IMG/VR virus record: IMGVR_UViG_3300049043_000112
Location: 124,001 to 188,000 of that record
DNA: 64,000 nucleotides
Strand: one strand, 5' to 3'
Translations under genes and position numbers: made by a program
Shown here: positions 37,116-38,485 of the stretch, piece by piece
Numbering within the stretch: the first letter of the stretch is position 1
Layout: every line of letters begins with the position of its first letter
Notes under the pieces: model-generated
Seen by the model: the letters and a program-made list of their open reading frames with translations, nothing else
What the model was told of the DNA's origin: nothing
Databases searched by the model: none

Positions 37116-37308
37116 GATAGTTTTCAAAGTTAAATGCAATTACTTCGTCAGGTATAAGATTACCTTGTTGGTCAAACATTTCGGGATAAGGTCTTGGAAT
37201 TTCCCGATAATTCATCATATATTCTCTCGCAACCCAACCTGCCATTACTCCCACTATAAGAAATAATACTGTTAGAAAGGAACCAAATACTAAGCTAACT
37301 GCTAACAT
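37078..37308 (-). CDS. Small single-pass membrane protein
   Basis: Hydrophobic N-terminal helix, PEMFD..GN, acidic tail. Confidence 0.75.
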   Translation of the reverse strand: MLAVSLVFGSFLTVLFLIVGVMAGWVAREYMMNYREIPRPYPEMFDQQGNLIPDEVIAFNFENYHDYDEEDDSAED

Positions 37309-37499
37309 TTCTTTTTCTCCGGGAAACTACTCTTTTCTTTCTTGAGTGAAAGGAAAATTCAAAGTAGATGGTTACTTCCCGATTTAGAAAGCAAATCATC
37401 TTCTCAAAAATGATGTGGAACGGTTAAGTTTGCTTTCTTTTACCTCCATTAAGAATAAATTCAACACCACGGTTTCGGTGGTCTTCTTTTTTATTTAGG

Positions 37500-37742
37500 T
37501 CAGGATTTGATGATTTGGTGTTCTTTGAGGAATTTGATTGTGTCAACAGAACCTCCTAACTTTTTATCATTACATATAACTTGTGGAAACGTAGCACCCT
37601 GACCAAATTCAGAATAGAATTCTTCTCTATTAAAGTGCTCTCCCAAATTATAAACCACAAAGTTACTTCCTGTCAACTCCAATACTTGTTTGACTTTATA
37701 GCAATATGGACAGTCCTCTTTGCTGTATACAGTGAAATTCAT
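37500..37742 (-). CDS. nrdC: Glutaredoxin
   Basis: CPYC active site, TFPQV, GG motif. Confidence 0.93.
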   Translation of the reverse strand: MNFTVYSKEDCPYCYKVKQVLELTGSNFVVYNLGEHFNREEFYSEFGQGATFPQVICNDKKLGGSVDTIKFLKEHQIIKS

Positions 37743-37775
37743 AAGGTTTATAAGATTTATATTAATTTATATAAG

Positions 37776-37877
37776 AAAAAGGAGGGTATAAAACCCCCCT
37801 TAGTAACCACCAACTCACCTCTTCACACCACTGAAGAGGGTCTTCATTCCCAAAGATACAAGGATGTTGAAGACCTT
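37776..37877 (-). ncRNA. Stand-alone structured small RNA, wcaG-motif-like
   Basis: Own promoter; hairpins GGTCTTCA/TGAAGACC and CTCTTCA/TGAAGAG; two TGGTG motifs; ends in a GGGGGT-TTTAT-ACCCTCC-T5 terminator. Confidence 0.7.
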
Positions 37878-37880
37878 GAT

Positions 37881-37909
37881 ATTATAAGGGATTTTTTGAA
37901 AGGTGTCAA
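37881..37909 (-). promoter_or_regulatory. Perfect-consensus sigma70 promoter driving the sRNA
   Basis: TTGACA-N17-TATAAT; the -35 box overlaps the TGA stop of ORF 37906-38118. Confidence 0.9.
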
Positions 37910-38118
37910 GCAGGTACTTCAGTCTCTTCTACAGGTTCTTCAGTTACTTCTGGTTCTGGAAGAGTTACTCCAGTTTGCTGTAGATATTCAATAATACCCT
38001 GAAGCTTAACTGCCATCTCTCTCTTTTCAACGACTTTAGTATTCAACTCTTGAATTTCTTGAATTAAGTCGCTTTGTTGTTGAATTGCAGACTGTAGGTG
38101 TAGTTGTTGTTCGTTCAT
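37906..38118 (-). CDS. Small acidic coiled-coil protein
   Basis: 70-aa ORF with heptad pattern. Confidence 0.7.
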   Translation of the reverse strand: MNEQQLHLQSAIQQQSDLIQEIQELNTKVVEKREMAVKLQGIIEYLQQTGVTLPEPEVTEEPVEETEVPA

Positions 38119-38170
38119 TGTTCTGTTTAAATTCTTATAGAATAACTTAAAAAATTAATTAAGTCAAGTC

Positions 38171-38199
38171 TTGACAGAATGCCAAAACTTGACTAGACT
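38171..38199 (+). promoter_or_regulatory. Sigma70-type promoter in antisense orientation
   Basis: TTGACA-N17-TAGACT on the plus strand, with no plus-strand gene downstream. Confidence 0.65.
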
Positions 38200-38226
38200 A
38201 GGTTTGTCGCCTTTGAAGATATAACT

Positions 38227-38485
38227 TTAGCTATTTTCTGCAACAAAAGCTTTACCAGCTTCAATTGCTGCTTCAACATCAGAAAGGTCATCATCTGAAC
38301 CAGTGATATGCTCACTGGTCATTTGAAGTTCTAAGTGTGCAACATTTCTGCCAACAGCATCAACAACTTCTTTGGTGACTTCTTCTTTTTCCATCTCACT
38401 CGGTAATTACCCAGACACTATCTCTCATTGCGGAAATTGCACCAGCAATTTCTTCAGCAGTAGGAACTCTATTTTCTTCAGGCAT
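38227..38485 (-). CDS. Small acidic protein, possible fibre-assembly helper (indel near 38400)
   Basis: RBS AAGGAG; MPEENRVPTAEEIAGAISAMRDSVWVIT / EMEKEEV...GRNVAHLELQM...AIEAGKAFVAENS*. Confidence 0.6.

What the first reader, a model, noticed from the sequence alone, without database searches (positions are those of the whole stretch)
37776..37909. Self-contained early sRNA with two UGGUG motifs
A consensus promoter, two hairpins sharing the CTTCA/TGAAG core (so alternative pairings are possible), TGGTG in the loop of hairpin 2 and again in the next segment, then an intrinsic terminator, and no ORF. From memory the cyanophage wcaG motif carries two UGGYG elements and was proposed to be cis-regulatory. 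Here the terminator before glutaredoxin suggests a roughly 100-nt trans-acting RNA (protein sponge) or an attenuator for nrdC.
Basis: partly seen in the sequence, partly recalled or inferred. Interest (0 to 1): 0.6.

Follow-up and report, generated by a model that had tools for sequence, protein, structure and literature searches.

The report
New cyanophage early small RNA family
The flagged stretch is a real, conserved gene for a roughly 100-base non-coding RNA with its own promoter and terminator, found in freshwater T4-like cyanophages and in no RNA family catalogued in Rfam; what it does is still unknown.

Summary
A perfect TTGACA-17-TATAAT promoter (37909-37881) is followed by two hairpins. 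TGGTG sits in the loop of the second hairpin and again in the spacer. An intrinsic terminator (37801-37773) comes next, and there is no conserved ORF.

I collected 78 distinct homologues: IMG/VR contigs plus one isolate, Synechococcus phage S-SRM01.
- 72 keep the promoter, ending exactly 6 nt before hairpin 1.
- Every pair of hairpin 2 and of the terminator shows compensatory changes.
- The hairpin-1 loop UUGUA(U/A)CUUUG is nearly invariant.
- 66 carry exactly two UGGUG. In a distant subgroup the second copy has moved into the terminator loop.

The unit usually precedes glutaredoxin. It also sits before at least seven unrelated genes, several times with a second sigma-70 promoter after its terminator. 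That fits a self-contained RNA gene better than a dedicated nrdC leader.

It is not wcaG: there is no Rfam hit, while a genuine wcaG (100 bits) lies elsewhere in the same genome. Neither the alternative pairing of the shared CUUCA/UGAAG core nor an antiterminator is conserved.

No RNA run was listed, so expression is untested. Function is inferred only. My best reading is a trans-acting early sRNA that uses its exposed loop and UGGUG motifs, with terminator read-through feeding glutaredoxin.

The parts
37904..37909 (-). -35 hexamer TTGACA. It overlaps the TGA stop (37908-37906) of the upstream 70-aa ORF.
   Evidence: 12/12 promoter; kept as TTGAC(A/G/T) in 72 of 78 homologues
37881..37886 (-). 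-10 hexamer TATAAT, 17-nt spacer. It ends exactly 6 nt before GUCUU of hairpin 1.
   Evidence: the distance is invariant in all 72 homologues that have the promoter
37874..37875 (-). Inferred transcription start, 6-7 nt after the -10, at the base of hairpin 1.
   Evidence: Inference from promoter geometry; not measured
37839..37875 (-). Hairpin 1: outer stem GGUCUUCA/UGAAGACC, inner stem UCCU/GGGA, apical loop.
   Evidence: The outer stem is nearly invariant. Covarying pairs: C-G to G-C and C-G to U-A. A compensated insertion gives GUCUUUCA/UGAAAGAC.
37851..37861 (-). Near-invariant hairpin-1 loop UUGUAUCUUUG (family consensus UUGUA(U/A)CUUUG).
   Evidence: this sense-strand motif occurs only once in the 236-kb genome
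37818..37839 (-). Hairpin 2: CUCUUCA/UGAAGAG with a 6-nt loop. C37839 can close either hairpin.
   Evidence: all 8 pairs show changes on both sides and 98.9% of cells are paired
37826..37830 (-). UGGUG motif 1, in the loop of hairpin 2.
   Evidence: a GGUG-containing loop is kept across stem variants
37806..37814 (-). Single-stranded GUUGGUGGU holding UGGUG motif 2.
   Evidence: 66 of 78 homologues have exactly two TGGTG; in L319, L314/L242 and L248 the second copy lies in the terminator loop
37773..37801 (-). Intrinsic terminator AAGGGGGGU-UUUAU-ACCCUCCUU followed by a U-tract.
   Evidence: all 8 pairs covary and 98.5% of cells are paired
37755..37771 (-). Conserved AT-rich box TATAAATTA..TATAAAT between the terminator and the glutaredoxin ATG. 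It belongs to the glutaredoxin 5' region, not to the RNA.
   Evidence: The same box precedes glutaredoxin in several loci that lack the RNA and is absent from other contexts of the RNA. It resembles the T4 late-promoter consensus (my own knowledge, untested).
37500..37742 (-). Glutaredoxin (nrdC-like), 80 aa: the usual downstream neighbour, reached only by read-through or from its own signals.
   Evidence: Pfam PF00462, E = 1.1e-11
37906..38118 (-). Upstream 70-aa ORF with no Pfam hit. In L208/L218 its homologue lies downstream of the RNA instead.

Best explanation
This is an independent gene for a small non-coding RNA of about 100 nt. The family is not in Rfam. It is found in freshwater T4-like cyanophages (relatives of Synechococcus phage S-SRM01, Kyanoviridae).

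Shown by comparison:
- A consensus host-type promoter starts transcription at the foot of hairpin 1.
- The RNA folds into hairpin 1 (near-invariant loop UUGUA(U/A)CUUUG), hairpin 2 (GGUG-containing loop) and a spacer with a second UGGUGG.
- It ends at a strong intrinsic terminator.

Inferred:
- Because the promoter is of the sigma-70 type, the RNA is made early by unmodified host RNA polymerase.
- It acts in trans through its exposed invariant loop and its two G-rich motifs. These either base-pair with C/A-rich sites (..CCACCA..) in other RNAs or hold a protein that recognises UGGUG.
- In the common arrangement the fraction of polymerases that reads through the terminator also supplies early glutaredoxin mRNA, so the terminator throttles nrdC as a by-product.
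For: - Promoter kept in 72 of 78 distinct homologues at a fixed 6-nt distance from hairpin 1. Three of the six without it are cut by contig ends.
- Covariation: 18 of 27 pairs change on both sides; 97.9% paired against 90.1% in shuffles and 53-71% with slid partners.
- Distant members fold independently into the same three hairpins.
- No conserved ORF; the possible ATG in hairpin 1 gives different frames and peptides.
- Two UGGUG in 66 of 78. The second copy moves to the terminator loop in a distant subgroup but stays single-stranded.
- The unit occurs before glutaredoxin and also before a collagen-like protein, a 410-aa protein that looks like a glycosyltransferase (my reading, no family search), a 64-aa ORF, a 325-aa ORF, a protein with an HExxH motif that looks like a metallopeptidase (no Pfam hit), and ORF76.
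- In L290, L256/L282, L253/L271 and L319 a second sigma-70 consensus promoter follows its terminator.
- Two copies lie on one contig (G003).
- A copy without a promoter (L189) has lost both motifs.
- Only one other ORF-less promoter-to-terminator unit exists in the 236-kb genome.
Against: - No transcript evidence: no RNA run was listed.
- About 63 of 78 copies sit directly in front of glutaredoxin with no sigma-70 promoter in between. Loci without the RNA have a sigma-70 promoter directly before glutaredoxin. The RNA therefore lies inside the early glutaredoxin leader, and a purely cis role is not excluded.
- No conserved target was found. The complement of the hairpin-1 loop is no more frequent than a control in 301 cyanobacterial genomes.
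- The best candidate in the phage itself is a 15-nt perfect complement in front of an autotransporter-domain gene (-30.3 kcal/mol). A shared word that long arises in 6.7% of shuffles, and a complete genome that has the RNA lacks the gene.
Confidence: 0.6

Rival explanations
1. Cis-acting leader or attenuator of glutaredoxin (nrdC). The structured RNA exists only to end most early transcripts before nrdC, constitutively or in response to a signal. The short RNA is a by-product with no function of its own.
For: - About 63 of 78 copies lie directly upstream of glutaredoxin, in the same orientation, 19-24 nt from the end of the aligned unit (which includes the AT-rich box) to the ATG (34 nt from terminator to ATG in the window), with no sigma-70 promoter in between.
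- Glutaredoxin loci that lack the element carry a sigma-70 promoter directly.
- The element and glutaredoxin stay linked while the upstream gene varies.
Against: - The same RNA stands before at least seven unrelated genes, several times followed by a second consensus promoter.
- No conserved antiterminator: hairpin-2 5' arm against terminator 5' arm is 84.1% paired, against 83.4% in shuffles and 87.6% when slid by one column.
- Hairpin-1/hairpin-2 cross-pairing is uncompensated.
- A plain terminator would not need a near-invariant 11-nt loop and two conserved UGGUG motifs.
- No Rfam riboswitch or leader family matches.
Confidence: 0.25
2. A divergent member of the wcaG RNA family (RF01761).
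For: Both RNAs carry two single-stranded UGGYG elements and occur in T4-like cyanophages.
Against: - No RF01761 match at E <= 10 over 37400-38300.
- The same model finds a true wcaG at 100 bits elsewhere in this genome and at 101 bits in S-SRM01.
- The architecture differs. wcaG has three hairpins with UGGUGCGGA and GUGGCG directly 3' of stems. Here one motif is in a loop and one in a spacer.
- The gene contexts differ.
Confidence: 0.03
3. No RNA function. The unit is an empty early-promoter/terminator cassette of the PeSL type, left after recombination and conserved only as a recombination or regulatory DNA signal. That signal could be a Chi-like GTTGGTGG or the extended -10-like TGGTATAAT seen in some variants.
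For: - T4-like phages shuffle genes at composite promoter/terminator motifs (PMC4122927).
- GTCAA..TTGAC palindromes overlap the -35 in many copies.
- The unit does move between contexts.
- GTTGGTGG resembles enterobacterial Chi (my own knowledge).
Against: - It is single-copy in three complete genomes, whereas PeSLs are repeated many times.
- Compensatory changes in hairpin 2 and the terminator show selection on RNA pairing.
- Only GGUGG is constant in the motif, not an 8-nt word.
- TGGTATAAT is absent from the window and from about half of the variants.
Confidence: 0.07
4. A very small protein gene or leader peptide starting at the ATG in the 3' arm of hairpin 1.
For: In the window an ATG (37848-37846) opens a 10-codon frame that ends at TGA in GAGGUGA (read).
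Against: - The ATG is present in only 58 of 78 copies.
- One-base insertions and deletions shift the frame.
- The peptides differ: MKTLFGGVKR, MKTTSLWWER, MKDPLQWCEEV...
Confidence: 0.01

Closest known systems
wcaG RNA (Rfam RF01761), an orphan candidate cis-regulator or riboswitch of marine cyanophages
   Same: Both are found in T4-like cyanophages, are structured and about 100 nt long, and carry two single-stranded UGGYG elements. In this genome the true wcaG is also followed by an intrinsic terminator.
   Different: No covariance-model match. The hairpin layout and motif placement differ, and so do the neighbouring genes. Both RNAs coexist in the same genome, so this is not a replacement.
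Terminated trans-acting small RNAs of bacteria and phages (for example prophage DicF and IpeX, Yersinia phage phiR1-37 Misc_4, cyanophage S-PM2 CfrI; named in PMC10690425 and from my own knowledge)
   Same: Own promoter, 50-300 nt, a 5' hairpin, exposed conserved loops, an intrinsic terminator with a U-tail, and no ORF.
   Different: No sequence or model similarity to any of them. It is encoded by a lytic cyanophage under an early host-type promoter. No target or partner is known.
Leader-derived small RNAs and attenuators (premature termination in a 5' leader that also releases a functional short RNA, as in riboswitch-derived SreA/SreB of Listeria; my own knowledge)
   Same: In the common arrangement it lies between the early promoter and glutaredoxin and ends at a terminator just before the gene.
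   Different: No conserved antiterminator and no ligand-type core. The unit also occurs detached from glutaredoxin, with a fresh promoter behind it.
PeSLs, the composite terminator/early-promoter motifs of T4-like phages (PMC4122927)
   Same: A near-perfect sigma-70 promoter and a G-rich/C-rich terminator stem of the PeSL kind. It lies in a variable early region and moves between contexts.
   Different: PeSLs are short terminator-then-promoter composites repeated many times per genome. This is promoter, then a 100-nt conserved structured RNA, then terminator, in one copy.

Membership tests
wcaG RNA (RF01761) | Scores at or above the Rfam gathering threshold (42 bits) with the family covariance model | tested here: not met
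   No hit even at E <= 10 in 37400-38300. The window-wide gathering search gave only tRNAs. Positive control: true wcaG at G000:C1:211828-211926 scores 100 bits.
wcaG RNA (RF01761) | Three hairpins, with UGGUGCGGA directly 3' of P1 and GUGGCG directly 3' of P3 | tested here: not met
   Consensus. Here UGGUG lies in the hairpin-2 loop and in the spacer or terminator loop.
wcaG RNA (RF01761) | Two single-stranded UGGYG elements | tested here: met
   66 of 78 homologues have exactly two TGGTG, both unpaired in the folds.
wcaG RNA (RF01761) | Lies in 5' UTRs of exopolysaccharide or high-light genes | tested here: not met
   The neighbours are glutaredoxin and assorted other genes. The family context is taken from PMC2864571.
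Trans-acting terminated sRNA gene | Own promoter at a fixed distance from the conserved RNA core | tested here: met
   72 of 78 have TTGACN-17-TANNNT ending 6 nt before GUCUU.
Trans-acting terminated sRNA gene | Own intrinsic terminator supported by covariation | tested here: met
   All 8 terminator pairs change on both sides; 98.5% paired.
Trans-acting terminated sRNA gene | No conserved reading frame | tested here: met
Trans-acting terminated sRNA gene | Independence from any one neighbouring gene | tested here: met
   At least 8 downstream contexts, with a second promoter after the terminator in four of them. Caveat: about 80% of copies are next to glutaredoxin.
Trans-acting terminated sRNA gene | A discrete transcript of the predicted size | not testable with these tools
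   No RNA run was listed for this sequence.
Trans-acting terminated sRNA gene | A target or partner with conserved complementarity or binding | tested here: inconclusive
   One 15-nt complement in the phage itself. It is not significant and the gene is missing from a complete relative. No host enrichment.
Transcription attenuator / riboswitch | A conserved, mutually exclusive antiterminator | tested here: not met
   Candidate pairings equal the shuffled and slid controls or are uncompensated.
PeSL (promoter-early stem-loop) | A short terminator-plus-promoter composite repeated many times per genome | tested here: not met
   One copy in each of G000, G001 and G005. The order here is promoter, RNA, terminator. 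Definition taken.

The most novel reading that the evidence does not exclude
This RNA and the orphan wcaG RNA are both encoded by the same phages, and each displays two single-stranded UGGYG elements. They could be two unrelated scaffolds for one ligand. That ligand would be a host or phage factor recognising UGGYG: an RNA-binding protein, or an RNA end such as ..CACCA-3' of tRNAs or AUCACC near the 16S rRNA 3' end, both of which the motif can pair with. The phage would titrate it early in infection. If true, this small, promoter-defined RNA would give the first experimental handle on what wcaG senses or binds.
Probability: 0.1. Interest if true: 0.8.

Novelty: new member of a known kind. Interest (0 to 1): 0.6.

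Why it matters
Few small RNAs of lytic phages are characterised, and almost none for cyanophages, which control much of aquatic primary production. Here a whole transcription unit (promoter, start, structured core, motifs, terminator) is defined by comparison of 78 variants. It is present in a cultured phage-host pair, S-SRM01 and Synechococcus sp. KCZYC6, so it is directly testable. Its motif resemblance to wcaG links it to a 15-year-old orphan RNA. It also shows how an sRNA gene can sit inside the early leader of a nucleotide-metabolism gene and move as a cassette between contexts.

One caveat on novelty: a 2023 catalogue of 8,495 unnamed candidate structured RNAs from IMG/VR (PMC10690425) may already list it. 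Its tables were not available here.

Tried and rejected
- Rfam: the gathering search on the window gave only three tRNAs. E <= 10 on 37400-38300 gave only noise and no wcaG, Yfr or other cyanobacterial family.
- GenBank phages: only S-SRM01 matches. Megablast of 3 kb gave nothing. Distant variants gave nothing.
- One viral-contig pattern was too loose and returned mostly chance hits. None of the 120 returned loci passed a simple check for the closing hairpin-1 stem, GGTG and a T-run. No host homologue was seen in the rows returned, which does not show absence.
- RNA runs: none was listed, so no reads were laid.
- Alternative pairing of the two hairpins: not conserved.
- Antiterminator: no support.
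- Leader peptide: not conserved.
- Host target for the hairpin-1 loop: 48 of 301 cyanobacterial genomes have the 13-mer complement, about the same as the backwards control.
- Same-sense loop motif as a shared protein operator: unique in the genome.
- Repeated ACACCACTG complements turned out to be coding repeats in fibre-like genes.
- Candidate target hairpin before the autotransporter-domain gene. It is the best non-self duplex in the genome (-30.3 against -26.3 kcal/mol for the next best). A 13-nt complement is kept in G001. But p is about 0.07 by shuffles, the gene is absent from the complete genome G005 and the locus is not syntenic in S-SRM01. I keep it only as a lead.
- Kissing between the hairpin-1 loop and the wcaG P3 loop: only 5-6 bp by eye. 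Dropped.
- Chi-like DNA reading: only GGTGG is constant.
- Supplements of the IMG/VR structured-RNA catalogue are not held.

Full report
**What is there.** All genes around the finding run on the minus strand, and so does the element.
- Read 5' to 3', the stop codon of a 70-aa ORF (38118-37906) overlaps a -35 TTGACA (37909-37904).
- Seventeen bases later comes TATAAT (37886-37881). The promoter scores 12/12.
- Six bases after the -10 starts hairpin 1 (37875-37839). It has an 8-bp outer stem, a 4-bp inner stem and an apical loop within UUGUAUCUUUG (37861-37851).
- Hairpin 2 follows directly (37838-37819), with the loop GUGGUG.
- Next is the spacer UGA-GUUGGUGGU-UACU (motif at 37814-37806).
- A canonical intrinsic terminator closes the unit (37801-37773).
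- Thirty-odd AT-rich bases later glutaredoxin starts (37742-37500; Pfam PF00462).
- The 104-nt RNA folds as three hairpins at -39.4 kcal/mol, z = -3.43.

**Where the window comes from.** The window is bases 124001-188000 of a 236-kb IMG/VR virus record rated complete. The only GenBank relative of the element is Synechococcus phage S-SRM01, a freshwater T4-like cyanophage (Kyanoviridae, Serangoonvirus). There the stretch, MW015081 10960-11104, is unannotated and also precedes glutaredoxin. The S-SRM01 paper does not mention it.

**Homologues and structure.**
- Homologues came from an exact pattern for hairpin 2, from loci found through the glutaredoxin protein and from a pattern for hairpin 1.
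- A covariance model built from the first 17 sequences picked out the true members. This gave 78 distinct sequences (alignment A6).
- On A6 the three-hairpin structure is 97.9% paired, against 90.1% in column shuffles and 53-71% when partners are slid.
- 18 of 27 pairs change on both sides, and 0 of 500 shuffles reach any observed measure.
- Hairpin 2 and the terminator each have 8 of 8 pairs with compensatory changes.
- Hairpin 1 varies little. It shows C-G to G-C and C-G to U-A exchanges and a compensated one-base insertion in both arms.
- Seven members, including the most distant, fold on their own into the same architecture.

**What is conserved beyond pairing.**
- The hairpin-1 loop UUGUA(U/A)CUUUG is almost invariant.
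- A GGUG-containing loop is kept in hairpin 2 whatever the stem sequence (CUCUUC, CUCUC, CUUCUC, CUUUC, UUCUUC, UUCC, CGUCU).
- A second (U)GGUGG stays single-stranded. In L319, L314/L242 and L248 it has moved from the spacer into the terminator loop.
- 66 of 78 sequences have exactly two TGGTG.
- The CUUCA/UGAAG core shared by the two hairpins in the window is not a family feature. The cross-pairing it allows is only 80-82% maintained and uncompensated.

**A transcription unit of its own.**
- 72 of 78 members have TTGAC(A/G/T)-17-TANNNT ending exactly 6 nt before GUCUU. Three of the six exceptions are cut by contig ends. The transcript therefore starts at the foot of hairpin 1 and is about 100 nt long.
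- About 63 of 78 copies precede glutaredoxin.
- The rest precede other genes: a 212-aa ORF inserted before glutaredoxin; the homologue of the window's upstream ORF; a 453-aa collagen-like protein; a 410-aa protein that looks like a glycosyltransferase (my reading, no family search); a 64-aa ORF; a 325-aa ORF; and a 574-739-aa protein with an HExxH motif (no Pfam hit).
- In four of these contexts a second consensus sigma-70 promoter follows the terminator.
- One half-complete contig carries two different copies. Three complete genomes carry one.
- A promoter-less copy (L189) has lost both UGGUG motifs.
- In the 236-kb genome only one other promoter-to-terminator unit lacks an ORF above 32 aa.
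- No reading frame is conserved.

**Relation to glutaredoxin.** Loci that lack the RNA have a sigma-70 promoter, often with the same TATAAATTA box, directly before glutaredoxin. In the common arrangement the RNA gene therefore sits inside the early glutaredoxin leader, and its terminator must reduce early nrdC transcription. I found no sign of a switch. The only plausible antiterminator (hairpin-2 5' arm with terminator 5' arm) pairs in 84.1% of cells, against 83.4% in shuffles and 87.6% when slid by one column. I take attenuation to be a constitutive side effect, not the reason for the conserved loops.

**Relation to wcaG.** The Rfam consensus shows UGGUGCGGA after P1 and GUGGCG after P3, both unpaired. 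Weinberg et al. classed it as a likely cis-regulator of cyanophages. The present RNA is not a member. It gives no RF01761 match at E <= 10, while the same model finds genuine wcaG RNAs at 100 and 101 bits elsewhere in this genome and in S-SRM01. The two RNAs coexist. The shared motif is a functional lead only.

**Search for a function.**
- The complement of the hairpin-1 loop is not enriched in 301 cyanobacterial genomes.
- The loop motif is unique in the phage genome.
- The best complementary site in the phage is a perfect 15-mer to AGGUGAGUUGGUGGU. It forms the 3' arm of a long hairpin ending 6 nt before the start of a 538-aa autotransporter-beta-domain protein that follows the phage lysozyme. 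At -30.3 kcal/mol it is the best non-self duplex in the genome. A 13-nt version is kept in another complete genome.
- However, shuffled RNAs share a word that long with the genome in 6.7% of trials. A complete genome with an identical spacer lacks the gene, and S-SRM01 is not syntenic there. It remains a lead, not a finding.
- No RNA sequencing run was listed for the region, so expression is untested.

**Verdict.** The feature is real. It is a conserved, structured small RNA gene with its own promoter and terminator, has no Rfam match, and is best described as a new cyanophage sRNA family. That much rests on tool results. Early timing, trans action through the loop and the UGGUG motifs, and the throttling of glutaredoxin are inferences. 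It may already be one of the thousands of unnamed candidates in the IMG/VR catalogue of PMC10690425, which I could not check.

Noticed in passing
window 37647-37676 (-): A second perfect sigma-70 promoter (TTGACA-18-TATAAT) lies inside the glutaredoxin ORF, on codons L-T-G-S-N-F-V-V-Y-N. A promoter-like match (TTGACN, 16-18 nt, TANNNT) is found just downstream of the RNA in 52 glutaredoxin loci, although the spacer varies. It could drive the downstream small genes.
   Followed up: partly
window 37295-37546 (-): A basic ORF of 82-83 aa is conserved as one frame in relatives (for example L185, L188, L237). Here it carries an in-frame TAA where the relatives have CAA. It is either a nonsense allele or not a real gene.
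   Followed up: partly
window 38162-38194 (-), and upstream of the sRNA promoter in many loci (for example L180, L152, L289): GTCAA-N3-5-TTGAC palindromes overlap the -35 box. They look like the composite terminator/early-promoter motifs (PeSLs) that shuffle genes in T4-like phages, and may explain how the RNA unit moves between contexts.
   Followed up: partly
G000:C1:211828-211926 (-), outside the window; locus L230 1501-1599: A genuine wcaG RNA (100 bits), followed directly by its own intrinsic terminator. In this genome wcaG may also be released as a short RNA.
   Followed up: partly
G000:C1 about 220147 (-), outside the window: This is the only other promoter-to-terminator unit in the genome without an ORF above 32 aa (188 nt). 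It may be a second small RNA gene.
   Followed up: no
G000:C1 229270-229330 (-); locus L462 1771-1835: A long conserved hairpin (-31.6 kcal/mol, z = -5.6) lies between the phage lysozyme and an autotransporter-beta-domain gene. Its 5' arm shares 12 nt with the sRNA spacer. A second, unrelated hairpin type occupies the same place in other relatives.
   Followed up: partly
L010/L188 546-1184, L185 552-1190, L283: A 212-aa ORF with no Pfam hit is inserted precisely between the sRNA terminator and glutaredoxin in some phages. It behaves like a mobile gene.
   Followed up: no
L228 2469-2568 (S-SRM01 192395-192494, +): A weak second match to the model (29 bits), about 870 nt downstream of the S-SRM01 wcaG. 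It has a hairpin with GGGUGGU in the loop followed directly by a terminator, but no hairpin-1 loop motif.
   Followed up: partly
alignment A6, second motif (window 37806-37814): In about half of the variants the second motif reads TGGTATAAT, an extended -10-like box whose transcripts would start inside the terminator stem. The window has TGGTTACTA instead.
   Followed up: no
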